A stretch of 64,000 nucleotides of DNA from Macrostomum lignano. Taxonomy: Eukaryota. The DNA is taken from contig NIVC01001526.1 of the NCBI GenBank assembly GCA_002269645.1, positions 209,594 to 273,593 of the forward strand. Reading direction: 5' to 3'. Position numbers and translations under genes: made by a program. Under the pieces are notes generated by a model. The model did no database searches and was not told the DNA's origin. It saw only the letters and a program-made list of their open reading frames with translations. This document shows positions 494-64,000 of the stretch, piece by piece; position 1 is the stretch's first letter; each line of letters opens with the position of its first letter.

Positions 494-1286
494 GACAACT
501 GAGATGGCGGTTTGTATGGAACTGACGGTTTGATTCCTCTCTTGAGCTTTGTGTAGCTGTGAGTAGGGCCTATTTATTGCCCAGAGCAGAATGTATGTTA
601 ACATGGAAGCGGTCGGCATGTGCTCATATTTCATTTATTGGATGTACATTTCTGAGCTATATAGTTCAGCTCTTTGATCCAGTCATCTTGCTTCACCCTC
701 TCTTCCCCTTCATTTAGTTAATCCTATGTAAAATGCACTGCGTGGGAGATTAACAGGCAGGATTTCTCTCCCCCTATAGCTCTAGCCAAAGCCTTAGAAT
801 TATAGGAATGCATTATTGACCATTTAGCCAATCCATAAGCTTGAAGCTGTATCAGATTTCTCACTGCAGATTTCAGGGGAAGATTAAGTATTAGCAAATT
901 CCATTGATTCATTTAGAGACTAATGGCTTTTTTGAGTTGCGATCAGACTGCATCATTACATGGTTAGTATGAAAGGACTTCTTTATATGGCTGAGACTGG
1001 ATGCATAGAGTTGAGTTGAGAAAGGAGAGTTGGTTAGTCAATTTTATAATCTACATGCATTATTTTATTGCAACTTATTGCATGCAGTGCAGTGACGTCT
1101 CAAAGACAGTCACAGACAAAATGTGATGTACCAACGACAGTTTTCAAATATATAGTGCGACACCCTGATATTTGATACAACGCAGCGTGAACGGACCTTG
1201 CATAAATTCTACTCTATAAGCTACTAGCTGCAGTATTTGTCAAAAATCTGCTTGTTTTTTTTACTTTTGTCCCACGATCAATGCAA

Positions 1287-4200
1287 ACTACGTAATGTGC
1301 AGATTCTGCCGGGTTTTCAGAATTCTGACGCAAAAAACGCAAATTATACTACTATCTGAAAATGAAGTAAGTAGTATACAAAAACGCTATCCTAAGCGTG
1401 ATATGGCAATATGTAGTCGTAATAATCCATGTGCTCATATTAATTCCATGTACATTAATCCCTATCTATCTCAAATTGGATATGTACATTAATTCCATGT
1501 ACATTAATCCCTATCTATCTCAAATTGGATATGTACATTAATTCCATATCCCAAATTGTCTATCCCCAATTCTATATGTACACTTACATTAATCTACAGT
1601 GTCATCCCCAGCGCGCGCGCACCAAAATTACATGTACAATACTACATGTACACAGAGGTGAGAATTACTAATCTCATCTACTACCAAATGAGTCAACATT
1701 CAAGTTTTAAAAACCACGTTATATACATATTCCTATTTATATGTCAATTATTCAAAACCTACATGTAGCGGATTACACTACTACCTTTAGTAGAGTTACA
1801 AATCAAGATTCTATTGAAAAAGACTGTATTCATATAGTTTTCACATTGGAAAAGCGTATATTTTCATTTCAATAATTGAAAAAGAGAGCAAAAACAGTAA
1901 GGAGACAACAGCAAGTTGAGACTTAATTATAGCCTGTACTACCAAACCCTCCTGCACCGCGAATTGAGTGGGTGTGGGAGGCCTCCTCATCGCCATTCCC
2001 TCTAGTATATCCTCACCCCTCGAAGCCCCTATACTGAATGTTGAATCACCCTTTAACTCGGACCATAGTCAAATTCAACCCTGTTCGAAAACAGCCACCC
2101 CTCCGATGTTCACCAGACACAGCGCAGACCCCATAACAAATCGAGCTAAATTTTAACACTCGCCCCTGTTTTCTCTGTCCCCCCTTCTAAATGCCAAGGA
2201 ATTTCGACCCTCTCTCCATTTTCAGTGTACAGACAGACCTTTCCACAGCACAGACCATATATTAAACTTCAAAACCCCTCTCTTCTCCGATTACGTCATC
2301 CATGCCGCCCCAGTTAGCAAGAAACCAACTTTTAATGCACACATCAACCCCCGCGAGCAAATCCGAGTCCGCCTACCTCTACCTGCATTGACAAACCCCA
2401 GCTGCATTTGTAAATGTACACAGCCTATGTATGAATCAGTGTCTCCACCGCATGCAATTCTGATTTACTTGATCTAAACTTTGTAAATTGTATAAGTCAC
2501 CCTTGCGTTATACTAGAAGTAGTGAAGTCCACATATTTAAATACGTGAGGCTATTCAATTCTGCCTCTCCGCATCCCCTACCTTCTCACTTCAAGCTTTC
2601 AGACCTGGTCTTTGAGACGGTTTAATCTGTTAGAAGCAGGAATGAATCATGCACTGACCTCTCCATACAAAGTAAAGTTGGAATTTCAGACAAGAAATTT
2701 GGTTATTTTAAAAGCTAAATGACTAGAAATGCACATTTTTTTCATTAAAATGCAGCTTTTCACAGTTTTTTAACGATTTTAACCTTAAAATGCTGACTTT
2801 GTTGATCAAAATCAGTAGTTTCATCACTAGAAACCATACTTTCAACAGCTAATTTGTCCAAATGTCGCTTTCAACTTGACCTTAGACTGCTTTTAAGCAG
2901 GAATGAACCCCACACAAACATCCACAAGCCAGCCCAAAATCATCCAAAGACATGGCTATTGAAGCCTAAATTGCTAGAAATGCGCATTTTTTCATAAGAA
3001 AATACAAATTTTCACAGTTTTTATGCATTTTTACGTTAAAATGCAGACTTTATTGATCAAAATCAGTAGTTTCATCACTAGAAACCATACTTTCAGCAAC
3101 TAATTTGTCCAAATATCGCTTTCAACTTGACCTTAGACAGCTTTTAAGCAGGAATAAACCCCCCACGAACATACACAAGCTAGCCCAAAATCATCCAAAG
3201 ACGGCTGTTGAAGACTAAATTGCTAGAAATGAGCATTTTTTCATAAGAAAACACAAATTTTCACAGTTTTTACGCATTTTTTACGTTAAAATGCAGACTT
3301 TATTGATCAAAATCAGTAATTCATCACTAAAAACCACAATTTTAACACAAAATTATCACAAATGCTACTTCTGGAACTCTGAGACAGCTTTGAGCAGGAA
3401 TTATAATCGCACATGGATTACCCGAGCCAGTCCAATATTCCACTGAAGCCAGGGTTTTTTAAAGCTGAATTGTTAGAATTGCTCATTCTTTCGTTTAATA
3501 AATGACAATTTTCACAGTTTTATTATTTTCTAACGTTAAAATGCGAAATGTATTGGTCAAACTTAGTAGTTTCATCCCAAAAGCCATAATTTCAACCGCT
3601 AATTTGTCCAAATGCTGATTCAAAGTTGGCAAGAGACAGCTTTCGAGCAGGAATGAGTCACACACTGATCTCCATATGCACACCCCGGCCCAAGTTGGAA
3701 TTCCACCCAAGACATTTTCATTGAAAGCTAAATTACTAGAAATTGCACATTTTCGTTTTAAAAAGGTCAATTTTCACAGTTTTTACTCTTTTTAACGTTA
3801 AAATGCTGACTTTATTGAACAAAATTAATCACTTCATCAGCAGAAACCATAATTTTTACAACTTAATGCTGTTTCATCATTCAAATGTATGTATTTGGTA
3901 CGTGTAATACCCCTCAAGAAGTCAGGGAAGGGATTATTCTTGAATATTGGGTTAAAACGTACAGTTTGCTATAAACCTAGCTATAATAATTTTAACATAT
4001 ACAGTCTGCGAAGCGGTCCGTTGATTTCGATTGACATTTAAACTGTCCCTCCCAGACCTCTCTCTCTCCTTCTGCACCCACCGAGAAAAGTGACTCATGC
4101 GGCAATCAGCTGGACAGGTTTTATTACTGAATTGGCAAAACAGCCAACACACAATGTTCATTAGACTCGTCTTCACAGCACAGACCCATGTAGAACAGAA

Positions 4201-7200
4201 CCACTCGTCCCTGTCTCTCTGACCTTACCATTTCTAACTGTCAAGGAATTCCGACCCTCCCTCTCCAATTTCAGTGTACAAACAGATATTTTCACAGCAC
4301 AGACTCATATATTGAGCCTCCTCCAACCAAAACCCTATCTTGATTACGTCATCCACCTCCCCCATAGGAGCAGTTAGCAAGAAACAAAATTTTTCGATGC
4401 ACATATGAACACTGTGAACCATGCAAAATCGCACATCTACGGGTCGATTTTGATTGACAATTTAATACCTTTTGTTGATGCTGCTGTGTACAGTAGTCTT
4501 ATTTCCGAAGCTCCTAGCAGTCATCTTTTAGATGTGGTGAATCAGTGTTGTTTTTGCCAACTTTACATCTTGATTCATCCTCCAAATTCTTCAACTCTGA
4601 CCATATTCAATAATTTAACCCATGCAAGTAGATTTGCCAATTCGCCAAATTAGCCAATACGAATGGGGCCAGAGGACCCACCCAAATCGAGCCCTTGTCT
4701 CTCTCAGGCCTCTCTCTCCTACACATACCCCAGAAAAGTGACTCATGAGGCAATCAGTTTAACAGGTTCAGTATACTGAATTGGCAAAACAGCAAACACC
4801 CAATGGTCAATGGACTCGTCTTCGCAGCACAGACCATTTTGAATAAAGCCAAAACACACATACACCCCTATTCTCTGACCAAACCTTTCCATTTCTAGTT
4901 GTCAACGAAATTCGACCGGCCTCTCTCTCAATCCCAATGTACATTTTGACGAAGCAAGCAGATCTTTTCACAGCACGGACCCAGCCTCCCCCAACCAAAG
5001 CCCTATCTCTGATTACGTCATCTATACATCCCCATAGAAGCAGTTAGCAAGAAAAAAATTCGATGCGCATATATGAACAATGCGAACCAAGCAAATCCGC
5101 GCGTCTACCAAAGCCAACCCTACCCTGCGTGCTGTAATTGCATTTGTCAATGTACACACCCTATGAATCAGTGTCTCCTTCTTTGGAACACACGAAGGCA
5201 TTAGTCAGAAAGTTTGGATGCAATTAAAAACTCTCTCGATGCTTTGCGTATAAACGAGTAATCGATTGAATCAATTGTACACTTGACACATTTAATTACG
5301 TGCTGCCATGCAACGGAAAGACAGGATAATGGGGTGGGTGGTCACGCAGCCTCATTCTCTCTTTCCTACTGATTTTTCATTATCTATCAATCTCAGCTCT
5401 TTCCGGGGCAACTCGCGCATTTGTGCATAGTTCCTCATCAGATTTACCACATGTTCATTTACATGTGATGTACATATGCAAGCGGCAGCCGATTTAAACC
5501 TGAGAAATGGTTGAAGCACTCCCCCGACTATGACTAAATGCACGTACGTTCAGTCAAATACAGGAAAATTTGACACCCGTAGTATGAAGATGAAATCTTC
5601 ACGAAAGCTTCACATGTTTATCTTTCTCTGTGGAAATGACGATAGTTTCTCAATAAAAATCTGTCATAGGCCCAATATAGCAGTTTAAATATTTTCACGA
5701 AAATGTCGCATTATTCAAAGAACTGATTTTTGCAAACTCTACTGTCAGTAGGAAGATGAGTTTTCATAGAGACATTTTGTAAAACATAGACTAAACTTTC
5801 AAATCATTCGTTTACACGACCAACTGTCTATATTAATGGTGGGGTTATTATTACTTTACAGAAAAACGCATGTCCTGTGTTACGACACTGCCTAGCAACC
5901 GTATAATTTTTGCAGGTCAAGGAGCATTAATACATGAACTAACACTCCTATTTTACATTCATTGAGAGGCGGCGGCAGCGGGCGGAGGGTGGCCGGACCG
6001 TGACTGTGTGCAGCACAGTCCCTGTCTCTACTGCTGCCTCCGCCCGCTGCCGCCGCCTCTCAATGAATGTAAAATAGGAGTGTTAGTTCATGTATTAATG
6101 CTCCTTGACCTGCAAAAATTATACGGTTGCTAGGCAGTGTCGTAACACAGGACATGCGTTTTTCTGTAAAGTAATAATAACCCCACCATTAATATAGACA
6201 GTTGGTCGTGTAAACGAATGATTTGAAAGTTTAGTCTATGTTTTACAAAATGTCTCTATGAAAACTCATCTTCCTACTGACAGTAGAGTTTGCAAAAATC
6301 AGTTCTTTGAATAATGCGACATTTTCGTGAAAATATTTAAACTGCTATATTGGGCCTATGACAGATTTTTATTGAGAAACTATCGTCATTTCCACAGAGA
6401 AAGATAAACATGTGAAGCTTTCGTGAAGATTTCATCTTCATACTACGGGTGTCAAATTTTCCTGTATTTGACTGAACGTACGTGCATTTAGTCATAGTCG
6501 GGGGAGTGCTTCAACCATTTCTCAGGTTTAAATCGGCTGCCGCTTGCATATGTACATCACATGTAAATGAACATGTGGTAAATCTGATGAGGAACTATGC
6601 ACAAATGCGCGAGTTGCCCCGGAAAGAGCTGAGATTGATAGATAATGAAAAATCAGTAGGAAAGAGAGAATGAGGCTGCGTGACCACCCACCCCATTATC
6701 CTGTCTTTCCGTTGCGGGCAGCACGTAATTAAATGTGTCAAGTGTACAATTGATTCAATCGATTACTCGTTTATACGCAAAGCATCGAGAGAGTTTTTAA
6801 TTGCATCCAAACTTTCTGACTAATGCCTTCGTGTGTTCCAAAGAAGGAGACACTGATTCATAGGGTGTGTACATTGACAAATGCAATTACAGCACGCAGG
6901 GTAGGGTTGGCTTTGGTAGACGCGCGGATTTGCTTGGTTCGCATTGTTCATATATGCGCATCGAATTTTTTTTCTTGCTAACTGCTTCTATGGGGATGTA
7001 TAGATGACGTAATCAGAGATAGGGCTTTGGTTGGGGGAGGCTGGGTCCGTGCTGTGAAAAGATCTGCTTGCTTCGTCAAAATGTACATTGGGATTGAGAG
7101 AGAGGCCGGTCGAATTTCGTTGACAACTAGAAATGGAAAGGTTTGGTCAGAGAATAGGGGTGTATGTGTGTTTTGGCTTTATTCAAAATGGTCTGTGCTG

Positions 7201-10200
7201 CGAAGACGAGTCCATTGACCATTGGGTGTTTGCTGTTTTGCCAATTCAGTATACTGAACCTGTTAAACTGATTGCCTCATGAGTCACTTTTCTGGGGTAT
7301 GTGTAGGAGAGAGAGGCCTGAGAGAGACAAGGGCTCGATTTGGGTGGGTCCTCTGGCCCCATTCGTATTGGCTAATTTGGCGAATTGGCAAATCTACTTG
7401 CATGGGTTAAATTATTGAATATGGTCAGAGTTGAAGAATTTGGAGGATGAATCAAGATGTAAAGTTGGCAAAAACAACACTGATTCACCACATCTAAAAG
7501 ATGACTGCTAGGAGCTTCGGAAATAAGACTACTGTACACAGCAGCATCAACAAAAGGTATTAAATTGTCAATCAAAATCGACCCGTAGATGTGCGATTTT
7601 GCATGGTTCACAGTGTTCATATGTGCATCGAAAAATTTTGTTTCTTGCTAACTGCTCCTATGGGGGAGGTGGATGACGTAATCAAGATAGGGTTTTGGTT
7701 GGAGGAGGCTCAATATATGAGTCTGTGCTGTGAAAATATCTGTTTGTACACTGAAATTGGAGAGGGAGGGTCGGAATTCCTTGACAGTTAGAAATGGTAA
7801 GGTCAGAGAGACAGGGACGAGTGGTTCTGTTCTACATGGGTCTGTGCTGTGAAGACGAGTCTAATGAACATTGTGTGTTGGCTGTTTTGCCAATTCAGTA
7901 ATAAAACCTGTCCAGCTGATTGCCGCATGAGTCACTTTTCTCGGTGGGTGCAGAAGGAGAGAGAGAGGTCTGGGAGGGACAGTTTAAATGTCAATCGAAA
8001 TCAACGGACCGCTTCGCAGACTGTATATGTTAAAATTATTATAGCTAGGTTTATAGCAAACTGTACGTTTTAACCCAATATTCAAGAATAATCCCTTCCC
8101 TGACTTCTTGAGGGGTATTACACGTACCAAATACATACATTTGAATGATGAAACAGCATTAAGTTGTAAAAATTATGGTTTCTGCTGATGAAGTGATTAA
8201 TTTTGTTCAATAAAGTCAGCATTTTAACGTTAAAAAGAGTAAAAACTGTGAAAATTGACCTTTTTAAAACGAAAATGTGCAATTTCTAGTAATTTAGCTT
8301 TCAATGAAAATGTCTTGGGTGGAATTCCAACTTGGGCCGGGGTGTGCATATGGAGATCAGTGTGTGACTCATTCCTGCTCGAAAGCTGTCTCTTGCCAAC
8401 TTTGAATCAGCATTTGGACAAATTAGCGGTTGAAATTATGGCTTTTGGGATGAAACTACTAAGTTTGACCAATACATTTCGCATTTTAACGTTAGAAAAT
8501 AATAAAACTGTGAAAATTGTCATTTATTAAACGAAAGAATGAGCAATTCTAACAATTCAGCTTTAAAAAACCCTGGCTTCAGTGGAATATTGGACTGGCT
8601 CGGGTAATCCATGTGCGATTATAATTCCTGCTCAAAGCTGTCTCAGAGTTCCAGAAGTAGCATTTGTGATAATTTTGTGTTAAAATTGTGGTTTTTAGTG
8701 ATGAATTACTGATTTTGATCAATAAAGTCTGCATTTTAACGTAAAAAATGCGTAAAAACTGTGAAAATTTGTGTTTTCTTATGAAAAAATGCTCATTTCT
8801 AGCAATTTAGTCTTCAACAGCCGTCTTTGGATGATTTTGGGCTGGCTTGTGGATGTTTGTGTGGGGTTCATTCCTGCTTAAAAGCAGTCTAAGGTCAAGT
8901 TGAAAGCGACATTTGGACAAATTAGCTGTTGAAAGTATGGTTTCTAGTGATGAAACTACTGATTTTGATCAACAAAGTCTGCATTTTAAGGTTAAAATCG
9001 TAAAAAAAACTGTAAAAAGCTGCATTTCAATGAAAAAAATGTGCATTTCTAGTCATTTAGCTTTTAAAATAACCAAATTTCTTGTCTGAAATTCCAACTT
9101 TACTTTGTATGGAGAGGTCAGTGCATGATTCATTCCTGCTTCTAACAGATTAAACCGTCTCAAAGACCAGGTCTGAAAGCTTGAAGTGAGAAGGTAGGGG
9201 ATGCGGAGAGGCAGAATTGAATAGCCTCACGTATTTAAATATGTGGACTTCACTACTTCTAGTATAACGCAAGGGTGACTTATACAATTTACAAAGTTTA
9301 GATCAAGTAAATCAGAATTGCATGCGGTGGAGACACTGATTCATACATAGGCTGTGTACATTTACAAATGCAGCTGGGGTTTGTCAATGCAGGTAGAGGT
9401 AGGCGGACTCGGATTTGCTCGCGGGGGTTGATGTGTGCATTAAAAGTTGGTTTCTTGCTAACTGGGGCGGCATGGATGACGTAATCGGAGAAGAGAGGGG
9501 TTTTGAAGTTTAATATATGGTCTGTGCTGTGGAAAGGTCTGTCTGTACACTGAAAATGGAGAGAGGGTCGAAATTCCTTGGCATTTAGAAGGGGGGACAG
9601 AGAAAACAGGGGCGAGTGTTAAAATTTAGCTCGATTTGTTATGGGGTCTGCGCTGTGTCTGGTGAACATCGGAGGGGTGGCTGTTTTCGAACAGGGTTGA
9701 ATTTGACTATGGTCCGAGTTAAAGGGTGATTCAACATTCAGTATAGGGGCTTCGAGGGGTGAGGATATACTAGAGGGAATGGCGATGAGGAGGCCTCCCA
9801 CACCCACTCAATTCGCGGTGCAGGAGGGTTTGGTAGTACAGGCTATAATTAAGTCTCAACTTGCTGTTGTCTCCTTACTGTTTTTGCTCTCTTTTTCAAT
9901 TATTGAAATGAAAATATACGCTTTTCCAATGTGAAAACTATATGAATACAGTCTTTTTCAATAGAATCTTGATTTGTAACTCTACTAAAGGTAGTAGTGT
10001 AATCCGCTACATGTAGGTTTTGAATAATTGACATATAAATAGGAATATGTATATAACGTGGTTTTTAAAACTTGAATGTTGACTCATTTGGTAGTAGATG
10101 AGATTAGTAATTCTCACCTCTGTGTACATGTAGTATTGTACATGTAATTTTGGTGCGCGCGCGCTGGGGATGACACTGTAGATTAATGTAAGTGTACATA

Positions 10201-10488
10201 TAGAATTGGGGATAGACAATTTGGGATATGGAATTAATGTACATATCCAATTTGAGATAGATAGGGATTAATGTACATGGAATTAATGTACATATCCAAT
10301 TTGAGATAGATAGGGATTAATGTACATGGAATTAATATGAGCACATGGATTATTACGACTACATATTGCCATATCACGCTTAGGATAGCGTTTTTGTATA
10401 CTACTTACTTCATTTTCAGATAGTAGTATAATTTGCGTTTTTTGCGTCAGAATTCTGAAAACCCGGCAGAATCTGCACATTACGTAGT
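1287..10488. mobile_element. Giant non-coding palindromic (foldback-type) element: arms 1287-5988 and 6037-10488, 48-bp spacer, 6-bp TSD ATGCAA
   Basis: Mirror-image ORF pairs (e.g. 5352-5543- / 6482-6673+, 1968-2156+ / 9619-9807-). Termini are ACTACGTAATGTGCAG...CTGCACATTACGTAGT. ATGCAA lies directly outside both ends (1281-1286 and 10489-10494). Confidence 0.85.
2630..3860 (+). repeat. ~250-bp tandem array (5 units) inside the left arm; 4 units in the right arm (~8165-9150)
   Basis: AGCAGGAAT recurs near 2635, 2896, 3146, 3392 and 3645, each followed by the shared CTAGAAATG...TTTCACAGTTTTT...AAAATGC.GACTTT...ATCAAAATCAGTAG block. Confidence 0.85.
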
Positions 10489-10512
10489 ATGCAATATGTG
10501 TTACACAATGTC

Positions 10513-10953
10513 GACAATATGAGTAGCATGATGTAGACAATATGAGTAGCATGATGTAGACAATATGAGTAGCATGATGTAGACAATATGAGTAGCATGA
10601 TGTAGACAATATGAGTAGCATGATGTAGACAATATGAGTAGCATGATGTAGACAATATGAGTAGCATGATGTAGACAATATGAGTAGCATGATGTAGACA
10701 ATATGAGTAGCATGATGTAGACAATATGAGTAGCATGATGTAGACAATATGAGTAGCATGATGTAGACAATATGAGTAGCATGATGTAGACAATATGAGT
10801 AGCATGATGTAGACAATATGAGTAGCATGATGTAGACAATATGAGTAGCATGATGTAGACAATATGAGTAGCATGATGTAGACAATATGAGTAGCATGAT
10901 GTAGACAATATGAGTAGCATGATGTAGACAATATGAGTAGCATGATGTAGACA
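10513..10953 (+). repeat. 23-bp minisatellite (GACAATATGAGTAGCATGATGTA)
   Basis: About 19 identical tandem units starting just outside the right end of the palindrome. Confidence 0.95.
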
Positions 10954-11791
10954 ATATTTGTCACACAATGTCGAGAATATTCGTCACACGATGTAGACAA
11001 TATGTGTCACACGATGTAGACAATGTGTCACACGATTACTCTAACAACTGCCTAACAGCTTTTTTTCCAGCGTTACATTCTCAACTTTGGCGTATACTAT
11101 AAGTAGTATTCGAGCGACAAAATCAGTTTGTTTTCTTGCATTCCGAATCGAGACAACAATTTCGAATACATTTAGATATTCTTCCCGGCTGTACAATCAA
11201 TAGGAAGTCGCTAAGAATGCGGGAGTTCTTCCTCCTATTGCGGGTCGATATCTGCCTAAACACGTACCTACCCCTGACACTGTCAATGCAATTTCTCTCT
11301 TCCCTTGCTTTTTTTCCTGAGCTCTTTCTTTCAATTTCTGCTCTTTTCTCTCTCTCTCTTTCTCTCCCTTCTCTGTCTAGCAACAGAGCTAAGCTATTAG
11401 GAGGTGGTCAACGAGTTGACTTGTGTAACCAACTCTTGTGCACATATCGTGAGTTCGCAATATTCACTGCGTGACACCGCTAACACACACACGTTAACGC
11501 GCTATATATACTCACAGTCAGAGTTGAATATATAATTTTAAACTTGTCAATTGGACGATCGTTCATTCACAGTTGCAACTTCAGTCAGACCCCCGTCAGT
11601 GCACGGCCACTAACAGCTGCTAGGCGGGAGCTTTTCGATCCAATATTCCTATAGCTCTGTTGTTAAGGAAGAAGCTACGCAACTATAACGACTATTCCAT
11701 ACTAGCATTGTAGCTCCGGCGTTGGGGTTGGCGGTGACGGTTGCGTCTTCCTATCGTGTCTTTTCACTTCAATAATAAAATAAAAGCAGCA

Positions 11792-20400
<8,609 letters not shown>

Positions 20401-23376: not shown

Positions 23377-26300
23377 TTAGCGCACACTCTTTCGCTTACG
23401 AAGCCGTTTTAAACAGCTTTCAACAGCCGAAGCTCCCGGCACCGAGGAGCCCATTGACAGGCGCCGGCGTTTAGCAGCAACCGGTGTTGCAGAAGTGGAA
23501 GCAGCAGCAGCAGTAGCAGCAGCAGCGGCAGAGCCGGACTTTTTCAGCTTCAATTGTTGCTGCTTTTGCTTTTGCTGTTTCTGCTGCTTTTTACCAGCAG
23601 GACTTGACGGCGCGGCGGCGGCAGCAGCAGCAGCAGCAGGAGACGCCGCGGTAGATCGAGTCTGCCGCTTTGCCGACGGAGAAGTAGAATCAATTGTTGG
23701 AGTCGTTGGCAGGTAGAAGCTGACGCCAGCAGCCTGCGATGCTGGAGCCGACGCTGTCGCCGAGCCCGACAACGGGGGCGGAGCCGGGGAACGTTTGAAG
23801 CCGGGCGAGAACAGGGTCCGATCGCTGCCGGCCTGCCGTTTCACCATTGCCTGGCCAGTCAGCTTGCCGCTCGGCTCGACGGCGGCTGCCGGCGCGTGCC
23901 TGGCGTGGCCGTGAGCGTTGGCGCCGGGCCTGTTGGCGTTCTGCCATTTGTCGCACTGGACCAACAGATCGTGCAGGCGAAGCGGCTGCTGCTGCTGACT
24001 CTGCTGTCGTTCGGCATCGTCTGAGAAGCCGCCTTCAACTACAGTCGGCGACTCTCGCTGCAGTCCCAGCCTGGCTAGCGTCAAGTCGCGCTGTTCGCTG
24101 CGCAGCTGCGACATGGGCCTGCCCGGCGGGTCCAGCATCACCACCAGAGCGGTGATGTTGTCAGCCCGCAGGTCGGCTCGCATCCAGCGTTGCATCGCCA
24201 TCTGAACCAGGCTGCCGCTTGGATTGTAAAAGAAATTCTGCGGCACGTCCGGGTCGGTGAATACCTGCGGCAGGGAGGGCGGCAGACAAAGAGGTTTAAT
24301 CTCTGAATGTCTTTGTCTCTTAATTCTTAAACAGAAACTTTGTTTCTTAAAATGGTCCCCGCTTTTTTAAATGGATATTTAATTTGTTAAAACTCTGTCC
24401 GAGTTTCTTAGAACAGTAACTCGGTTTCTTAGATTAAATAATACAGACCCAGTTTCTTGGAATAGCAGCTCTGTTTCTTAGAATACAGACCCAGTTTCTT
24501 GGAATAGCAGCTCTGTTTCTTATAATACAGACCCAGTTTCTTGGAATAGCAGCTCTGTTTCTTAGAATACAGACCCAGTTTCTTGGAATAGCAGCTCCGT
24601 TTCTTAGAATACAAACCCAATTTCTTGGAATAGCAGCTCTGTTTCTTAGAATACAGACCAAGTTTCTTGGAATAGAAGCTCTGTTTCTTAACAGACCCAG
24701 TTTCTTGGAATAGCAGCTCTGTTTCTTAACAGACCCAGTTTCTTGGAATAGCAGCTCTGTTTCTTAACAGACCCAGTTTCTTGGAATAGCAGCTCTGTTT
24801 CTTAGAATACAGACCCAGTTTCTTGGAATAGAAGCTCTGTTTCTTAGAATACAGACCCAGTTTCTTGGAATAGCAGCTCTGTTTCTTAGAATACAGACCC
24901 AGTTTCTTGGAATAGCAACTCTGTTTGTTAGAATACAGACCCAATTTCTTTGAATAGCAGCTCTGTTTCTTAGAATACAGACCCAATTTCTTGGAATAGC
25001 AGCTCTGTTTCTTAGAATACAGACCCAGTTTGTTGGAATAGCAACTCTGTTTGTTAGAATACAGACCCAATTTCTTGGAATAGCAGCTCTGTTTCTTAGA
25101 ATACAGACCCAGTTTTTGGAATAGCTCTGTTTCTAAGAATACAGACCCAGTTTCTTGGAATAGCAACTCTGTTTCTTAGAATACAGACTCAGTTTCTTAG
25201 ATTAGGAGTCTCATTTGTTTAAAATGGCGTTCAGTTAGTAAAACAATCTTATAGCCACATTCAGTTTTTGTTTAAATTGGCAAACTCAATCTTATAGAAC
25301 AAAGCAAATTCCAATAACAATACCTTATTCTCTGTGGATCTCTCGCAGATGTGCACCATCTCAACGGCGCTATCGGGGGCAACCATATTCCACAATCCGT
25401 CGGAACCCAATATGAGGCACTTGTGCTTGCTATAATCCAAATTGATGCACTGCACGTCCGGCTCTGGGGAAACGTGGAATTCCGAAGAGTTTTTATCATA
25501 GGACCATAAATCGCCCAGGGAACGGGCTACGGCTAGGAATGGCACCGATTCAAATAACTGGCGCTGCTGCTGTTGCTGAGGAGACGAATCGGCGCCGCTC
25601 GACTGAGCTGGCCGGCGCCACACAACCCGATAGACGCCGCCTTTGCGCATCAGACTGCCACCGGCCCGTTCGATACGCTCTCGCTCCTTCGGGTTTGACG
25701 GCTTGTGCTCAACCGTGAGTGCTTGAGCGTGCCACAGGTCGCGGGATTGTTCGCGGGTGTCCCGACAGCCCAGCACAATGGCCGAGTCGCCAACGTGGCC
25801 AGTGTAGAGTTTACGATTGCGCACAATAGCAATGGAGGCTGTGGTGCCGGCTGTGCTGTCTAAACCGCGCGAAGTCTTGGCCCAGTTGCCTGGCGGGTTG
25901 TTGTAGGGGACAATTGTGGGTGCGTCACGTGACTCTGTGGCTATTCAACATTGATTGGTTAACTATGTTAGCCTATCTTAAGCTTGATTTTTATAGAGAT
26001 TCTAAATTGGTCAAGAAATATTCTTCCGCATTTAAGAGTTCAGCTCGGTTCATGGGGACTCTAAGCGGTGATTCTAGTGGGGATCAAGGGCGATTCTAAA
26101 GGGAGATTAAGGGCAATTCCTGGGGTGGATCAAAGCCAATTCTATTTGGGGGATTAGGGGCGATTCTTGAGGTGGATTACAGTGATTCAAATGGGAAGAT
26201 TAGAGGCGATTTCTGGTGGATTAGAGTGATTCTTGTGGTGGATTAGAGTGATTGTTGTGGTGGATTAGTGATTCAAATGGGGAGATTAGGGGCGATTCCT

Positions 26301-27449
26301 GGTGGGTTGGGAGTGATTATTGGGGTGGATTAGAGTGATTCTTCTTAAGGTGGATTAGAGTGATTCTTCTTAAGGTGGATTAGAATGATTATTGGGGTGG
26401 ATTAGGGTGATTCCAATGGGGGATTAAGAGCGATTGTAATGAAGAATTAAGGATGATTCTTGGGATCTATAAGGGCAATTTTAGTGAGTGAGTCTTAGCA
26501 ATAATTGTAATAAATTAGAGTTTTTTAGTGAATTTAGGGCTATTTCTAGGGTGGATTTGCAGCAATTCTTTCAATAGATTTGGGACCTCATAGTTAGCCT
26601 CAGCAATTTGAAGGTGATTGTTCATTAGAATTGGCAATTTTTGGGGTAGATTAGTTGCTATTTTTAGGATAAATTAGGGAAATAATTGTAATAGATTTGT
26701 AGGCAGTTAGAAGAAAGAAGAACAATAGAAAAGGAATAATACATTAATACATCATAATATACTATCCGTCAAAAGTTCCCAAACCCTTGCTACGATGTCT
26801 TCTAGCAGACATAATTTCAGTCCGTTTTAATTGTAACTTGATTCAAATGAAAGCTGCGGATCTTAGCTCCATGATGTGGTCAAGAAAAAGTTTATTCGAA
26901 GGAGTGCGTGTGAACAGGCCAGTGTTATGTACATAAAGGTTAGAGAAAAAAGTGAGGAAAAGACAAACAAGCAATTGTCTATTGATTGGAACTAACATTT
27001 TTATATCTTAAAATAAGCCTTATAAAATGCAAAAAGATTTAGCCAAAAAGATTTGGCCAATGCTAGGCCTATTGGCATTTTTTAAACAAAAATTAAAAAT
27101 TAGTATAGAGCTTACCTCGCTCATTCCACATTGCTTTGTGGGTATTAATGAAGCCTTGTCTTATAGCTTCAAGAACAGCATTGTCATCATTTGACCAAAA
27201 GCCATCAATCTTCTTTATTTCACTCAATAGATGAGACTTAGCAAATTTAGCTGCTTCAGCTCCACCATGACCATCAAAAACACCAAAGTAGGCAAATTTA
27301 ATGCGATCAGATTCAGGCTTGTCTGGGCACTTTTCAAAGTAATACGTTGCAAAATCTTCCATGTATGCACGCATACCCTGATTCATGCATTCTGTTACTC
27401 GCAGGTTGATGCCTATTTCAAAACTCTGCATTCTAGAATCAATAGGCAT
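23377..27449 (-). CDS. PPM1D: PP2C-family phosphatase Wip1/PPM1D; exons 27449-27116, 25889-25324, 24264-23377
   Basis: QGMRAYMED, YFGVFDGHGG, STAGTTAS, HVGDS, VEHKP, FLAVARSLGDLWSY, HVSPEPDV, LILGSDGLWNM, ADNIT. The WRRP and DLWSY motifs are PPM1D-specific. Junction phases 1 and 0 are consistent. An in-frame alternative acceptor ~45 nt upstream of exon 2 is possible. Confidence 0.93.
24420..25200 (+). repeat. 42-bp minisatellite (AATACAGACCCAGTTTCTTGGAATAGCAGCTCTGTTTCTTAG) in PPM1D intron 2
   Basis: Tandem units visible; they give the LGLYSKKQSCYSKK pseudo-ORFs. Confidence 0.93.
26060..26470 (-). repeat. Degenerate ~21-bp array (GGGGATTAGGGCGATTCT-like) in PPM1D intron 1
   Basis: Recurrent GGATTAG(A/G)G(C/T)GATT. 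It resembles the reverse complement of the 22736-23176 unit. Confidence 0.6.
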
Positions 27450-29467: not shown

Positions 29468-32400
29468 ATGACATCATCATCCATGTACTACAAAAAGCTA
29501 CTGCAGGATTTAAGTAAGTAGCAGGTTTTTTCAAAACCCTATTTAATTTTAAAGTAATAGTTTTAGTTGGATCTGCAATTAGCGTTCTATCCTCATGCAA
29601 CTCAAACAGAACAGTCCCAGCTAGATCGCATCCGTTTCGCCGCCTATCGAACAGCAATGAAACTGCGCTTCATCCAACGTCGAGTCAGCCTCCACCTGGT
29701 TGACCTGTACACCTTGATCGAATGCTTCAGACTGGCCCATTTTCACGTGCTCGAATATGATGCCGAGCTGAGCCCGGAACAGCTCGAACAGTTGCTATGC
29801 ACCCTGTACGATCAGTTGAACAAGCGGCTCGGGCTGGCCAACTCAGCCGAAGTGGCTGGCGCTCACGAGAACTACCTGCAGGAACTGGCCGGCATGCTGC
29901 ACGCTTGGCTGTTTGCCAGATCGCAGTTCGGCTTCGGCCAGCGAATGACCGCACTAGGCGCTAAAGTGGCCATGTCTGTACTGTGCAACGCTAAGCCTAT
30001 TGATAAATTGCGCTATCATTTCACGCTCATATGCGACCCGGTTACTGGGGTGCTAGATCGCACTAAAGCCCAGGCTTACACCATCGAACTGCTATCCTTA
30101 CCTGCCGGAGTATTCGAACAGAATAATTTCTATTACCAGCCGGACACCTGCTGCTTTCTGTCTCAGTGCGCCGGTCTGTTGCATTTCTTGGAAATTCTTC
30201 TAGCCGAAGACGCCGCTCCACAGCCGCTGCTCTGGCTGACGACATTTCATCGGCTGCAGACTACCGCCAGCCATCCAGTGAGGTGCTCGGTGTGCGGCCA
30301 GGAGCCGATATTGGGCTTTCGGTACAAATGCCAACAGTGCATCGGTTCGTTTAACCTGTGCCAGGAGTGCTTCTGGACCGGGGCGACTGCTGGCGGGCAC
30401 ACGCTCAACCACGAGGTTAAGGAGTACACCAGCTGGGTGAGTGGCGCTTGGCCAGCAGGTTGCTCGAAGTTTACATAAAGTGGGTTATGCCCAGCGCTAA
30501 GGGAATTCTGCTCATTCCGCTGACACCTGAGCGCACATACATGCGCGCCAGTACACATACATGCGCGCCAATACTGTACTTAGGCGCGCACTCAAATACA
30601 CACGCTCACACAGGGTGTACAGCGGGCCCTTTGACTTTCTAGTCGTCAGGCATGTCTGTACTCTCTCGATGCCTGTGTTTCAATTTAGAAACTCCATTGC
30701 GTCGATTATTGTAATCCCCTAATCGTAGTCTCAGAAAACAATTAAATTTATTAATTAACCTCCATCTAAGATCTTAGAGGCTGCAGAAAAGCAGAAATTT
30801 CAATTACAATTGCAGCAACATCCCAGTATCGATCAAAATGGCCCCCATATCGATTGAAGCAACCCCCAGTATCGATCGCAGCAACCCCCACCCATATCGG
30901 TCGTAGCAACCCCCATATCGATCGCAACAACCCCCATATCGATCGCAGCACCCCTATATCGATCGCAGCAACCCCCACCCATATCGATCGCAGCAAACCC
31001 AATATCGATCGCAGCAACCCCGACCCATATCGATTGCAGCAGCCCCCACCCATATCGATCGCAGCAACCCCCACCCATATCGATCGCAGCAACCCCATAT
31101 CGACCGCAGCAACCCCCACCCATATCGATCGCAGCAACCCCCACCCATATCGATCGCAGCAGCCCCATTATCGATTTTAGCAACCCCCACCCATATCGAT
31201 CGCAGCAACCCCCACCCATATCGATCGCAGCAACCCCAATATGGATTGTAGCAACCCCCACCCATATCGATCGCAGCAACCCCAATATCGATTGTAGCAA
31301 CCCTCACCCATATCGATCGCAGCAACCCCATATCGATCGCAGCAACCCCCACCCATATCGGTCGTAGCAACCCCCACCCATATCGATCGCAGCAACCCCC
31401 ATATCGATCGCAGCAACCCCCATATCGATCGCAGCAACCCCCATATCGATCGCAGCAACCCCCACCCATATCGATCGCAGCAACCCCCACCCATATCGAT
31501 CGCAGCAACCCCCATATCGATCGCAGCAACCCCCACCCATATCGATCGCAGCAACCCCCAAATCGATCGCAGCAACCCCACCCATATCGATCGCAGCAAC
31601 CCCAAAATCGATCGCAGCAACCCCCACCCATATCGATCGCAGCAACCCCCACCCGTATCGATCGCAGCAACCCTCATATCGATCGCAGAAATTCTAATCT
31701 CGCTATGAATAAAGTATCAGTTCTTCATAGAACATTTCTCTATTTTATATGCCTTCCAGTGATCAATAAGTCCTTTGAGCTACCGTATTGGTATAAATCC
31801 TATAGCAGCAGTTCATATAACGCTTGGAAACATGCCATGAACTTTGTTTGCATTGGCAGAGCTTGGGGATGAAGCGAGTACGTGTCGGAGACGAGATTGA
31901 GGATCAGTCAGCCACGTGATTGCTTTTTTTGTGGAGCTTTAAGTGGACATTCAATCGCTAAATTTGCGGTGTGTATAAAGTGCAGCAACTCTTGAAAAAA
32001 TGAGAATGAATGAACCGCGTCCTCGCTCAACAGGGCGGTTGGTTTAATACTATGTAGTTGGGCACTTGTAAAGTCCTAGAATAGAATGAATAAGCTGTAA
32101 ACCTTTTAAGCCTATGCTCCACTTTTATCCGCATGGGACTCGGTATAAATATTTATACACAGCAAACATTGCTGTTCCGCTTGCTAGGCCTGTTGCTCTG
32201 TGCTTTTCCATCCATCTCGTTCATCGGTTTTGCTTCATAGCTACTGTTTCTATGCTTTTATATTGCAGGCATTTTCTTCTTTTAGTTTGGCTAACTATTC
32301 ATTGTTTGCGAATCAGTTGTTTTTGGAATAATTTTAACATCCGTTTACTGAAATGTTATCAGAGACTCTTCGAATTGGATCTGTGCATTTGAATAGCCTG

Positions 32401-33502
32401 TGTGAAGTGTCAGGGGGCAGAGCAGTTCTACTCTGACTGACTGACTGACTGACTGACTGACTGACTGACTGACTGACTGACTGACTGACTGGCTGACTGA
32501 CTGACTGACTGACTGACTGACTGGCTCACGCATATTAATTGAAAACACGTGTTAGAATCCGTTACACATACAAGCATATAAAAGCTCTACTAAGCCCAAA
32601 GTTTCCCTTCGTTTACCTTTCATATCCGGATCGCTTATCTTATCTCCTTGACGTTTCTCTCTTCCTCTCTCCAACTTCATAGGCATAAGGTTTATAGGGA
32701 AAATCTTTCCCGTTGTACAGGGGGTGTTGCTAAGGTAGTTGGGGATAATTTAGAATGGCGAAGAAGGTGGAGGGGAGCTGCAGGGGGGTGGGGCTACCGT
32801 TATTGGGCCCGAATGTTCGAACCGTGCAGGTCCAGCAAGAGCCAGATGGTGGGTTTCTGCGTGCAACTTTTTTTACCTGCACCAGATTCAGTTAGAGTGA
32901 GGGTGTTGCTGGGCAAGGCTTCTACATCATTTCTTTCTTCGGTGTCTTCCCGTTTTTTCTGTCTCTCCGACCTGCACAGTCAGCTGGCTGTATAGAAAGG
33001 GGATAAAAGCTGGCGGAGGGGCGACTGGCTGCCGGGACACACAGACGCAAAACTTCAGTCCCGTTTAAATCGAGAGATTCTGCAGCTTTCTATTTAATCT
33101 GTCCAAAAGCAGATCATGCCAAATAAGGAAGGTAAAACTTCTGTAGTGGTTAATCCCAGCGATGAAGCTTTCCCAGCTTCTCGCGCCGCAGTTGTCTGCC
33201 CGCGCTGCTTGAAGACCCGGCCGTCTCCGCCTTCTCTGCCGCAATCTTTTTCGGCTGTTTTGTCTTCTTCCGCATCGAATTCTTCTGCTTTTTCTGCGCC
33301 GCAATCCGCCGAACAGAAGCAGCAAAACAGCCGGCCACCGCCGCGTCCGGTTAAACGGTCGGAGAGCTTCACCTCCCGCCTCACCTCAATGCTGCTGCCC
33401 CGCTCCGTGAGTGCCGCTTCTGTGTGTCTGTCTGTCTGTGTGTGTCTGTCTGTTTGTGTCTGTCTGTCTGTCTGTGTGTCTGTCTGTTTGTGTCTGTCTG
33501 TC

Positions 33503-33547
<45 letters not shown>

Positions 33548-36500: not shown

Positions 36501-36629
36501 GCCTCGTCCGCTTCGCCTCACCAGGGCCGCAGCCGCCACTTCAGCGGCCAACCGACGGCGTCTCTGGAGCGCTCGGCGTCCGTCCGAGGGCGCGGGCACG
36601 GCGCCGCTCCGATGATGTTGATGGGCGGC

Positions 36630-36671
<42 letters not shown>

Positions 36672-39600: not shown

Positions 39601-39967
39601 CTTCGGCTGCCGATCTGGCGCAGGCGCGAGCTCAGGAGCGCAAAATTCGCGACTTGGAACGTCAAAACGAACGCATGCTTGCAGAGATTGAACAGTTAAA
39701 ATTGCAGTCGGCTCAGCTGCGGGAACAGCAGAGTCACAGCCAGGATCAGCTGATCATAAATCAGAACAGCCTCCTTGGCGAGTTGCGACATCTCAGACAG
39801 CGCAAAGATCAACTTGAGGACAGGATGGGCCGTCTGCAGGAGTCCAGGCGAGATCTTATGCAGCAGCTTGAACAGCTGATGGCCAGACTGTCTATGGCCG
39901 ATACCTATTATCGGGCTCAGTCTGCCGCGGCCGCCTCGCGTTCGGTGCCAGCAGCTCTGCCAAACAT

Positions 39968-39999
<32 letters not shown>

Positions 40000-40226
40000 C
40001 ACAATATCCTCATTATTATGCCCAGCAACAGCAGCAGCAGCATCCTTACCATAGTTTGCAAATTATGCATCATCAACATCATCAGCAACATCAGCAACAA
40101 CAGCAACAACAGCATCAACAGCAAGACCCAGTGCGGCATCTGTTCCATGCCGCGGACGATGTGTCCACTGCGATTGGTGGCCTAGTTGAAGAATTACAAC
40201 AGCTACAGTATTCTACTGTGGATTGA
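29468..40226 (+). CDS. DTNA: Dystrobrevin; exons 29468-29513, 29610-30436, (33113-33406 optional), 36435-36786, 38284-38626, 39500-40226
   Basis: [19 protein letters not shown] (EF-hand region), ZZ finger CSVC...GFRYKCQQC...LCQECFW...[31 protein letters not shown] and C-terminal coiled coils ([37 protein letters not shown]). All junctions are phase-consistent. The alpha/beta paralog label is not meaningful for an invertebrate. Confidence 0.93.
30845..31688 (+). repeat. ~19-25-bp minisatellite (CCCATATCGATCGCAGCAACCCCCA) in dystrobrevin intron 2
   Basis: Tandem units with a palindromic ATCGAT core. Confidence 0.94.
32423..32524 (+). repeat. (GACT)n microsatellite
   Basis: Direct observation. 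Confidence 0.95.
33113..33406 (+). CDS. Putative cassette or alternative exon of dystrobrevin (98 codons, phase 0-0)
   Basis: CAG acceptor, open frame [20 protein letters not shown]...[23 protein letters not shown] donor, GC-rich against its flanks. Confidence 0.55.
33420..33666 (+). repeat. (GTCT)n/(GT)n compound microsatellite
   Basis: Direct observation, just after the 33407 donor. Confidence 0.93.
34043..34443. mobile_element. ~400-bp MITE with 50-bp TIRs and an internal ~110-bp direct duplication carrying AGTCTATG(G/A)GCCATAGACT palindromes
   Basis: 34043-34092 (AGTATTGGTTTTGTCAGCCTAACTGAGAATAAAGCCATCCAAAGTGAGAA) matches the reverse complement of 34394-34443 with one mismatch. No clear TSD. 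Confidence 0.7.
35905..36368 (+). repeat. ~21-bp minisatellite (GCGCCTTAGTGGACAATTTAG)
   Basis: Tandem units that become more homogeneous toward the 36434 acceptor. Confidence 0.92.
36803..37570 (+). repeat. 30-bp G-rich minisatellite (GGGGATCTGGGAGATTTGGGATGACTATAA)
   Basis: About 25 units starting just after the 36787 donor. Confidence 0.94.
37996..38260 (-). repeat. 33-bp tandem array containing a tRNA T-arm/B-box motif (CCCGGGTTCGATTCC) in each unit
   Basis: Plus-strand unit CCTCTGACACCCTACCTGGAATCGAACCCGGG(T/C); about 7-8 units, degenerating toward 38260. Confidence 0.85.
38870..39460 (+). repeat. ~20-bp minisatellite (AGACGT(C/G)ATTCTTAGAAAC)
   Basis: Tandem units in the last dystrobrevin intron. 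Confidence 0.92.
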
Positions 40227-60700: not shown

Positions 60701-60920
<220 letters not shown>

Positions 60921-63943: not shown

Positions 63944-64000
63944 CACTACATGTGTATTATATATATATGCATGCAAGCTTTCGGACTGCTCCAAGTGTAT

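What the first reader, a model, noticed from the sequence alone, without database searches (positions are those of the whole stretch)
1281..10494. 9.2-kb self-palindromic element with a 6-bp target-site duplication and no coding capacity
Seen: bases 1287-5988 are the reverse complement of 6037-10488, with only 48 bp unpaired. The hexamer ATGCAA sits immediately outside both termini (ATGCAA|ACTACG...CGTAGT|ATGCAA), the signature of an integration event. No transposase, integrase or polymerase ORF is apparent. Known: among eukaryotic TIR elements a 6-bp TSD is typical of Polintons/Mavericks (retroviral-type integrase), whereas classic foldback elements (Mutator-type, Galileo/P-type) make 7-11-bp TSDs. 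Polinton termini are usually 5'-AG, which this element lacks. Inference: this is a mobile giant hairpin, perhaps a copy-back (snap-back) non-autonomous derivative of a linear protein-primed or integrase-mobilised element, i.e. one end copied back on itself and reinserted. It may define an undescribed non-autonomous class. If transcribed it would give a ~4.5-kb dsRNA.
Basis: partly seen in the sequence, partly recalled or inferred. Interest (0 to 1): 0.92.

Follow-up and report, generated by a model that had tools for sequence, protein, structure and literature searches.

The report
Giant non-coding foldback transposon copy
A 9.2-kb stretch of an animal (probably flatworm) genome is a nearly perfect, gene-less DNA hairpin bracketed by a duplicated 6-base target site; it looks like an unusually large copy of the already known 'foldback' kind of jumping DNA, not a new class of element.

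Summary
Bases 1287-5988 and 6037-10488 are reverse complements around a 48-nt centre. They differ by six substitutions, three 1-nt indels and one 251-nt tandem-repeat unit. ATGCAA lies directly outside both ends (chance about 3e-4). Six-frame Pfam scans of an arm find nothing.

Each arm has the layout described for foldback (FB-like) transposons: a unique flanking domain, a ~250-nt tandem array, an inner domain and a tiny middle domain.

The window is eukaryotic and about 32% tandem repeats. It is probably from Macrostomum: a retrotransposon tail is 87% identical to an M. lignano sequence. A second, small foldback-like element with a 9-bp duplication lies at 63177-63943.

Best reading: a real, young, non-autonomous foldback-type insertion of unknown superfamily.

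The Polinton/copy-back idea has no support. There are no gene remnants, the termini do not fit, and the size and repeat lengths are wrong. IS3EU/GingerRoot also make 6-bp duplications, and 6 bp lies within the 4-10 bp quoted for IS256/MuDR.

An assembly artefact is unlikely, because the flanks are not palindromic and the arms differ by clustered substitutions.

Only one copy could be seen. No accessible collection holds this genome, so copy number, empty sites and read support remain untested.

The parts
1281..1286 (.). Left copy of the 6-nt direct repeat ATGCAA (putative target-site duplication)
   Evidence: Identical to 10489-10494. Chance about 2.7e-4.
1287..5988 (+). Left arm of the palindrome (4702 nt), starting ACTACGTAATGTGCAG
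   Evidence: No Pfam family in six frames apart from one sub-threshold match at E 0.54. No similar sequence elsewhere in the window.
1287..2714 (+). Flanking (outer, mostly unique) domain of the left arm. It holds a 49-nt x 2.2 tandem at 1439-1547 and a partial copy (2157-2446) of the ~650-nt unit.
   Evidence: 100% identical to its partner up to position 2746.
2715..3863 (+). Array of about 4.6 tandem units of ~250 nt, 72-92% alike. The left arm has one unit more than the right arm.
   Evidence: (families D4-D9). The 251-nt indel and clustered substitutions are shown.
3864..5988 (+). Inner domain of the left arm. It holds two diverged copies (~74%) of a ~650-nt unit (about 4044-4440 and 4696-5178) and a G+C-rich last 30 nt.
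   Evidence: (D11-D14, D18).
5989..6036 (.). Middle domain (loop), 48 nt, asymmetric. A 7-bp mini-hairpin at 6002-6020 is flanked by a 13 x 16 nt internal loop.
6037..10488 (-). Right arm of the palindrome (4452 nt), the mirror image of the left arm. Its ~250-nt array lies at about 8162-9060 and its 49-nt tandem at 10228-10336.
10489..10494 (.). Right copy of the 6-nt direct repeat ATGCAA
10508..11024 (.). Neighbour, not part of the element: a 23-nt minisatellite (22.5 units). Its degenerate first unit seems to span the insertion point: joining the flanks with a single ATGCAA gives a 23-mer that matches the unit at 14 of 23 positions.
   Evidence: The 14/23 count was made by eye on the sequence, and it is weak evidence.

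Best explanation
This is a genuine copy of a non-autonomous class II (DNA) transposon of the foldback type, in an animal genome that is probably a Macrostomum flatworm. The element (1287-10488) consists almost wholly of two very long terminal inverted repeats. Each repeat is built as flanking domain, ~250-nt tandem array and inner domain, and the two are joined by a 48-nt middle domain. It encodes nothing. It would have been inserted by an enzyme supplied in trans that recognises the AC...GT termini and cuts the target with a 6-nt stagger. Repair of that stagger produced the ATGCAA duplication, at the edge of a 23-nt minisatellite about 1.9 kb upstream of the nearest coding-like ORF. Shown: the structure, its bounds, the direct repeat, the absence of coding capacity, and the fact that the arms are distinct copies. 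Inferred: that it was mobile, that the enzyme is a DDE transposase or integrase, and that the event is recent. The age inference rests on a contrast: the arms are ~99.9% identical, while repeats within an arm are 8-28% diverged. So the arm sequence is old, but the two arms were copied from each other, or homogenised, very recently.
For: The exact 6-nt direct repeat directly outside the last complementary base pair comes, with a chance of about 3e-4. The flanks beyond the repeat are unrelated to each other and not complementary, as expected for an insertion and not for a fold-back join. The arm layout equals the flanking / tandem ~220-bp / inner / middle layout described for foldback elements. 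Copy-number differences of the tandem unit between arms are also typical of that class. There is no coding capacity, as in Tetris and most Tm1 copies. The same window holds a second, small foldback-like element (63177-63943) with an exact 9-nt direct repeat, so this genome carries such elements. Clustered substitutions plus a whole-unit indel between the arms show two physical copies.
Against: Only one copy was seen. Nothing else in the 64-kb window resembles the arms or the termini. Searches of the metagenome, viral, plasmid and phage collections found nothing, but none of these collections is expected to hold this genome. Mobility, family membership and a consistent duplication length are therefore untested. 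The 6-nt duplication differs from the 8-10 nt of described foldback families. The AC...GT termini match no superfamily whose termini I could check. The TGCA core of the repeat is palindromic, which slightly weakens the duplication argument. Arms of 4.5-4.7 kb are far longer than those cited for foldback elements (up to 1.7 kb in Tetris).
Confidence: 0.55

Rival explanations
1. Palindrome made in place. An ordinary transposon with short terminal inverted repeats, already flanked by its 6-nt duplication, sat at this site. A break inside it was then repaired by fold-back (snap-back) synthesis. The 3' end primed on a short inverted match at the G+C-rich inner end, copied the left half back to its terminus, and rejoined through the homologous right terminal repeat. 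The present 9.2-kb hairpin would then never have moved as such.
For: This explains the near-identity of the arms alongside old internal repeats. It also explains the short asymmetric 48-nt spacer next to a G+C-rich stem and the intact duplication. It needs no family of giant hairpins, which fits the fact that only one copy is seen. Comparable inverted rearrangements of resident transposons are known from general knowledge, for example the Mu killer locus of maize.
Against: No trace of a different right half or of coding sequence remains. The arm layout already looks like a mature foldback element with a tandem-repeat domain. The mechanism requires two precise steps.
Confidence: 0.2
2. Assembly or read artefact. 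A fold-back chimeric long read (template and complement read as one molecule, or a missed adapter) was built into the contig, so one arm does not exist in the genome.
For: Fold-back reads exist in long-read data and can tangle assemblies. The likely source genome was hard to assemble, was built from noisy PacBio reads with Canu and Pilon, and is rich in repeats. Two of the three 1-nt differences between the arms lie in homopolymer runs, as read errors would.
Against: A fold-back read gives flank-arm-arm'-flank', so the palindrome should run on into the reverse complement of the same flank. Here the two flanks are unrelated, and each abuts a terminus with the same 6-mer in direct orientation. 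The arms differ by a whole 251-nt repeat unit and by four substitutions clustered within 48 nt that resemble neighbouring units. Two strands of one molecule would not differ in this way. The 48-nt centre is unique, G+C-rich genomic-looking sequence, and the arm plus centre had no match in the plasmid collection.
Confidence: 0.1
3. A local inverted segmental duplication of ordinary, non-mobile DNA, made by replication template switching. The ATGCAA repeat would be coincidental.
For: Inverted duplications with a short spacer are a known product of template switching (general knowledge). The TGCA core is palindromic, so part of the direct repeat comes for free if the palindrome is extended by 5 nt with one mismatch. 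ATGCAA is about twice as common in this window as expected (34 occurrences).
Against: The exact 6-nt direct repeat at the boundary has a chance of roughly 3e-4 to 1e-3. Template switching predicts microhomology at the joins, not a direct repeat of the flank. It also usually leaves a duplication-triplication pattern rather than a cleanly bounded hairpin.
Confidence: 0.07
4. One reading: a copy-back, non-autonomous derivative of a Polinton/Maverick or another protein-primed or integrase-mobilised virus-like element.
For: The 6-nt duplication lies within the 5-8 bp (usually 6) reported for Polintons.
Against: No remnant of polymerase, integrase, capsid, ATPase or protease was found in six-frame Pfam scans at E<=1. 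The size (9.2 kb) and repeat length (4.5-4.7 kb) fall outside 13-25 kb and 100-1500 bp. The termini are AC...GT. There were no matches to viral contigs or phage records. Other superfamilies also give 6 bp.
Confidence: 0.03

Closest known systems
Foldback (FB-like) transposons, e.g. Tetris of Drosophila virilis, FB of D. melanogaster, Galileo of D. buzzatii (PMC4079207)
   Same: The element is almost entirely long inverted repeats. Each repeat is modular: an outer flanking domain, a domain of ~220-250-nt tandem repeats whose copy number varies, and an inner domain. The middle domain is short and non-coding. There is no ORF, and the element is flanked by a direct duplication.
   Different: The duplication is 6 nt here, against 8-10 (Tetris), 9 (FB, general knowledge) and 7 (Galileo, as stated in the finding). 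The arms are 4.5-4.7 kb, against up to about 1.7 kb. The middle domain is only 48 nt. The arms are ~99.9% identical. Only one copy is seen, so family status is unproven.
Tm1 Mutator/Foldback family of root-knot nematodes (PMC3169594)
   Same: Composite inverted repeats of variable length with internal repeat motifs. Most copies are non-coding. Repeat-motif copy number differs between arms.
   Different: Tm1 has 8-10 (mostly 9) bp duplications, defined 7-bp terminal motifs, on average 93% identity between arms, and a known transposase-encoding relative. None of these is shown here.
Polinton/Maverick elements (PMC10748475; PMC10045372)
   Same: A duplication of about 6 bp, and terminal inverted repeats.
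   Different: Polintons are 13-25 kb with 100-1500-bp repeats, and they carry protein-primed polymerase, integrase and capsid genes. Here there are no such genes or remnants, the termini are different, and the element is a near-complete hairpin.
IS3EU / GingerRoot DNA transposons (PMC10045372)
   Same: They usually make 6-bp target-site duplications.
   Different: Their complete families have TA..TA (occasionally TG..CA) termini. This element has AC..GT and no transposase.
Fold-back artefacts of long reads and palindromic chimeras of whole-genome amplification (PMC12870357; PMC6218980, listed)
   Same: A near-perfect palindrome of several kb, with little or no sequence between the halves.
   Different: Artefacts mirror the flank as well, and their two halves come from one molecule. 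Here the flanks are unrelated, a direct 6-mer brackets the structure, and the halves differ by a repeat unit and by clustered substitutions.
Hairpin-RNA (hpRNA) loci and inverted transposon rearrangements such as Mu killer (general knowledge, not checked in a paper here)
   Same: A long inverted repeat that would give double-stranded RNA if transcribed.
   Different: No transcript, small-RNA or target evidence is available. No other sequence in the window is homologous to the arms.

Membership tests
Foldback-type (FB-like) non-autonomous DNA transposons (structural class) | Long terminal inverted repeats make up most of the element, with a short non-coding middle domain | tested here: met
   Arms of 4702 and 4452 nt and a middle domain of 48 nt. 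No Pfam family in six frames apart from one sub-threshold match at E 0.54.
Foldback-type (FB-like) non-autonomous DNA transposons (structural class) | Modular repeats: flanking domain, tandem-repeat domain, inner domain | tested here: met
   1287-2714 is mostly unique, 2715-3863 is a ~250-nt array of about 4.6 units, and 3864-5988 is the inner domain.
Foldback-type (FB-like) non-autonomous DNA transposons (structural class) | Flanking target-site duplication | tested here: met
   ATGCAA on both sides. The length of 6 nt differs from the 8-10 nt of the Mutator-type foldback families.
Foldback-type (FB-like) non-autonomous DNA transposons (structural class) | Repeated in the genome, with copies at different sites each carrying its own duplication | not testable with these tools
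   No other copy in the window. The source genome is in none of the searchable collections.
Mutator-superfamily foldback elements (FB, Tetris, Tm1) | 8-10-bp (mostly 9-bp) target-site duplication | tested here: not met
   The direct repeat is exactly 6 nt, and the bases outside it differ. IS256/MuDR together are quoted at 4-10 bp, so the superfamily is not excluded, but the described foldback families are.
Polinton/Maverick | 5-8-bp (usually 6-bp) target-site duplication | tested here: met
   6 nt.
Polinton/Maverick | Protein-primed DNA polymerase B, retroviral-type integrase and capsid-module genes, or their remnants | tested here: not met
   The six-frame Pfam scan of an arm at E<=1 returned only a sub-threshold CCCH zinc-finger match at E 0.54. 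The longest open stretch is 106 codons.
Polinton/Maverick | 13-25 kb long with 100-1500-bp terminal inverted repeats; 5'-AG...CT-3' termini (as stated in the finding; general knowledge) | tested here: not met
   9.2 kb long, repeats of 4.5-4.7 kb, termini AC...GT.
IS3EU/GingerRoot | 6-bp duplication together with TA..TA (rarely TG..CA) termini | tested here: not met
   The duplication length fits, but the termini are AC...GT. Shifting the boundary to obtain TG...CA destroys the direct repeat.
Long-read fold-back artefact | The second half maps to the same place as the first on the opposite strand, so the flank is mirrored too, and both halves derive from one molecule | tested here: not met
   The flanks are unrelated. 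The arms differ by a 251-nt unit and clustered substitutions. Read-level support itself could not be tested.

The most novel reading that the evidence does not exclude
The element is the first seen member of a family of giant, almost loop-less hairpin transposons that make 6-nt duplications. Its arms would be re-templated from one another at each round of copying (which would explain ~99.9% arm identity despite old internal repeats), and it would be mobilised by an integrase-type or otherwise unassigned enzyme. That would be a foldback lineage outside the Mutator and P superfamilies, possibly derived from a larger virus-like or self-synthesising element.
Probability: 0.07. Interest if true: 0.75.

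Novelty: new member of a known kind. Interest (0 to 1): 0.35.

Why it matters
If real and repeated, this would be one of the largest and most perfect foldback-type elements described. It would also be the first with a 6-bp duplication, which would add an independent origin of the foldback architecture in a flatworm. That would support the view that foldback structure arises repeatedly in different transposon superfamilies. Long perfect palindromes are fragile, recombinogenic and a potential source of double-stranded RNA. One sitting about 1.9 kb upstream of a coding-like ORF could therefore affect local stability and expression. For genome builders, it is a useful test case for telling true palindromic insertions from fold-back read artefacts using sequence features alone: unrelated flanks, a direct duplication, and arm-specific differences. 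As it stands, with one copy and no read, population or expression data, it is a well-formed but ordinary-looking repeat feature.

Tried and rejected
1. Other copies inside the window. blastn of an arm against the rest of the window (E<=1e-3) and a 16-mer terminal search with up to 3 mismatches found nothing beyond the two termini.

2. Copies elsewhere. Exact terminal 24-mer and 20-mer searches and a 29-mer from the 250-nt unit, run against metagenome and viral contigs, gave 0 hits. The arm plus centre against plasmids (near) and phages (distant) gave no match. These collections are not expected to contain an animal genome, so the negatives say little.

3. Finding the source contig or an orthologous locus through exact-product look-ups of window ORFs, including the 91-aa ORF in the tandem array. 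None is on record.

4. Host identification.
- I guessed that ORF 14747-15052 was GRAMD4-like. It found no homologue at all and gave only a weak PRT_C match, so I dropped the guess.
- The dystrobrevin-like exon hit only ~40%-identical proteins of fish, coral and millipede, which does not identify the host.
- The retrotransposon tail gave the only close hit: 87% identity to a Macrostomum lignano entry. That protein's contig is not on record.

5. Moving the 251-nt gap within the tandem array, to see whether the clustered substitutions vanish. They do not: 18 or more mismatches for the alternative placements against about 5.

6. Reading the boundary as TG...CA (LTR- or Ginger-like termini) by including the TGCA core. 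No flanking duplication remains, so I rejected it.

7. Reading the centre as a hairpin-telomere or concatemer junction. The 48 nt are asymmetric (a 13 x 16 internal loop), and the 7-bp mini-hairpin is 1.5 nt off the axis, so this is not supported.

8. Rfam and tRNA scans of the window found nothing.

9. A literature search for foldback elements with 6-bp duplications, and for Macrostomum DNA transposons, found nothing specific.
Full report
**1. The observation**

The inverted repeat is real and sits at the stated coordinates.
- The repeat finder reports four collinear blocks of 99-100% complementarity that together pair 1282-5988 with 6037-10493.
- A global alignment of 1287-5988 against the reverse complement of 6037-10488 shows six substitutions, three 1-nt indels and one 251-nt indel. 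Two of the 1-nt indels lie in homopolymer runs.
- The arms are therefore 4702 and 4452 nt. The extra 251 nt in the left arm is one unit of a ~250-nt tandem array.
- Four substitutions and one 1-nt indel cluster within 48 nt of the first tandem unit, and some match the state of neighbouring units. Moving the gap does not remove them.
- The 48-nt centre (5989-6036) is asymmetric. As a single strand it folds into the long stem, a 13 x 16 nt internal loop and a 7-bp mini-hairpin.

ATGCAA lies at 1281-1286 and 10489-10494, directly outside ACTACG...CGTAGT, and the direct repeat is exactly 6 nt. The per-base match probability in this window is 0.254, so a 6-nt match at fixed positions has a chance of about 2.7e-4. 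ATGCAA occurs 34 times in the window, which gives a similar figure.

The TGCA core is itself palindromic, so the palindrome can formally be extended by 5 nt with one mismatch. That reading needs a mismatch next to 1460 nt of perfect pairing and does not explain the identical outer bases. I therefore read the hexamer as a target-site duplication.

An arm has no coding capacity. The longest open stretch is 106 codons. Six-frame translations gave no Pfam family apart from one sub-threshold CCCH zinc-finger match at E 0.54.

**2. Context**

The window is eukaryotic.
- It carries PP2C exons (25261-27449, minus strand) and a dystrobrevin-like exon with EF-hand_2, EF-hand_3 and ZZ domains (29567-30478).
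- About 32% of it is tandem repeats, in more than 30 different minisatellite arrays.
- There are no Rfam families or tRNAs.

The dystrobrevin-like exon is only about 40% identical to anything in the protein collection. The C-terminal ORF of a degenerate non-LTR retrotransposon (17229-17942, minus strand) is 87% identical over 82 residues to a transposon fragment inside a UniRef entry of Macrostomum lignano.

This fits the published description of that genome: more than half repetitive, 15% simple and tandem repeats, and a difficult PacBio/Canu/Pilon assembly. I take the host to be Macrostomum or a close relative. This is an inference from a single hit.

**3. Anatomy of the element**

Each arm has three parts:
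- An outer, mostly unique 1.4 kb. It holds a 49-nt x 2.2 tandem and a partial copy of a ~650-nt unit.
- An array of about 4.6 units of ~250 nt, 72-92% alike.
- An inner 2.1 kb. It holds two ~74%-identical copies of the ~650-nt unit and ends in a G+C-rich stem.

This is the flanking-domain / tandem-repeat-domain / inner-domain / middle-domain plan described for foldback transposons such as Tetris.

The repeats within an arm are old (8-28% diverged), whereas the two arms are ~99.9% identical. So the arm-to-arm copy, or the last homogenisation, is very recent. The intact duplication agrees with a recent event.

**4. What it is**

An insertion is the simplest account of a cleanly bounded hairpin with unrelated flanks and an exact direct repeat.

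Joining the flanks with a single ATGCAA gives a 23-mer that matches the unit of the adjoining 23-nt minisatellite (10508-11024) at 14 of 23 positions (sequence). This is weak support for the flanks once having been contiguous.

The same window holds a second, small foldback-like element at 63177-63943:
- two inverted arrays of a 62-nt unit;
- a centre of degenerate TTAGGG-like repeats;
- an exact 9-nt direct repeat, CACTACATG, on both sides.

So this genome does carry foldback elements, with a different duplication length.

My best explanation is a non-autonomous foldback-type DNA transposon copy. It would be mobilised in trans by an unidentified enzyme that makes 6-nt staggered cuts (confidence 0.55).

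**5. Rivals**

(a) The palindrome formed in place, by fold-back repair inside a resident conventional element (0.2). This explains the arm identity, the short asymmetric spacer and the single copy. It cannot be separated from the main model without other copies.

(b) Assembly artefact (0.1). Fold-back reads exist and can tangle assemblies. But such a read mirrors the flank as well, and its halves derive from one molecule. Here the flanks are unrelated, a direct 6-mer brackets the structure, and the arms differ by a repeat unit and clustered substitutions.

(c) Inverted segmental duplication with a chance hexamer (0.07).

(d) A Polinton/Maverick copy-back derivative (0.03). Only the duplication length fits. 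Gene remnants are absent, and the size, repeat length and termini do not fit.

**6. Comparison with known systems**

Six-base duplications are not specific to Polintons:
- IS3EU/GingerRoot usually make 6 bp, but have TA..TA termini.
- LTR-type integrases make 3-6 bp.
- IS256/MuDR are quoted together at 4-10 bp.

Described foldback families have 8-10 bp duplications (Tetris, Tm1). [quoted passage not shown]

The element therefore works like, and is built like, a foldback element. It fails the duplication-length criterion of the Mutator-type foldback families and the terminal-motif criteria of Polinton and IS3EU. Its superfamily is unknown.

**7. What could not be done**

No accessible collection holds this genome:
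- Exact-product look-ups failed.
- One exon ORF had no homologue at all.
- Pattern scans of metagenome and viral contigs were empty.
- Plasmid and phage searches were empty.

Copy number, consistency of the duplication, empty sites, read support and expression are therefore all untested. They are listed as descriptive next steps.

**8. Verdict**

I rate it a new member of a known kind (foldback-type non-autonomous transposon), notable for its size, its near-perfect arms and its 6-nt duplication. Interest is 0.35. The most novel reading not excluded is a distinct lineage of self-templating giant hairpin elements, at a probability of about 0.07.

Noticed in passing
window 63168-63952: A small foldback-like element at 63177-63943. 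It has two inverted arrays of a 62-nt tandem unit (63183-63485 and 63654-63937, 90-95% complementary) around a ~170-nt centre of degenerate TTAGGG-like telomeric repeats. An exact 9-nt direct repeat, CACTACATG, flanks it at 63168-63176 and 63944-63952, the duplication length typical of Mutator-type foldback elements.
   Followed up: partly
window 1-64000: About 32% of the window is tandem repeats. More than 30 unrelated minisatellite arrays (units of 13-62 nt, 0.2-1.6 kb each) lie between and inside genes, roughly one every 1-2 kb. This fits the repeat-rich Macrostomum lignano genome described in PMC5730564.
   Followed up: partly
window 17229-17942 (-), with 17558-17845 (-): A degenerate non-LTR retrotransposon fragment. 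Its C-terminal ORF, with a Cys/His motif, is 87% identical over 82 aa to a transposon piece inside a Macrostomum lignano UniRef protein. An RNase H-like stretch lies in a different frame, so there is at least one frameshift and the 5' part is missing. This is the only clue to the host.
   Followed up: partly
window 16251-16885 (+): Two overlapping ORFs. The second has a weak tyrosine-recombinase (Phage_integrase) C-terminal match at E 6e-4, below the Pfam cut-off. It may be a Crypton- or DIRS-like remnant, lying next to the retrotransposon fragment.
   Followed up: no
window 34043-34443: A MITE-like element with 50-nt terminal inverted repeats (98% complementary) enclosing 301 nt, including a 106-nt x 2 tandem repeat. 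I saw no clear flanking duplication.
   Followed up: no
window 37997-38263: A 33-nt (99-nt higher-order) tandem repeat whose unit contains GGAATCGAACCCGGG. This looks like the reverse complement of a tRNA T-arm, so the array may be tRNA- or SINE-derived. ARAGORN finds no tRNA there.
   Followed up: no
window 25261-27449 (-) and 29567-40226 (+): Host genes. There are PP2C phosphatase exons. There is also a dystrobrevin-like gene whose EF-hand_2, EF-hand_3 and ZZ domains sit in one 303-codon exon, only about 40% identical to the best database proteins. A glutamine-rich coiled-coil exon lies at 39471-40226. The sequence between the exons is packed with minisatellites.
   Followed up: partly
window 33419-33673 and 60701-60917: (TCTG)n and (ACAG)n microsatellites in inverted orientation 27 kb apart. 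They account for most of the long-range 'inverted repeats' reported outside the element and are not a structure of interest.
   Followed up: yes
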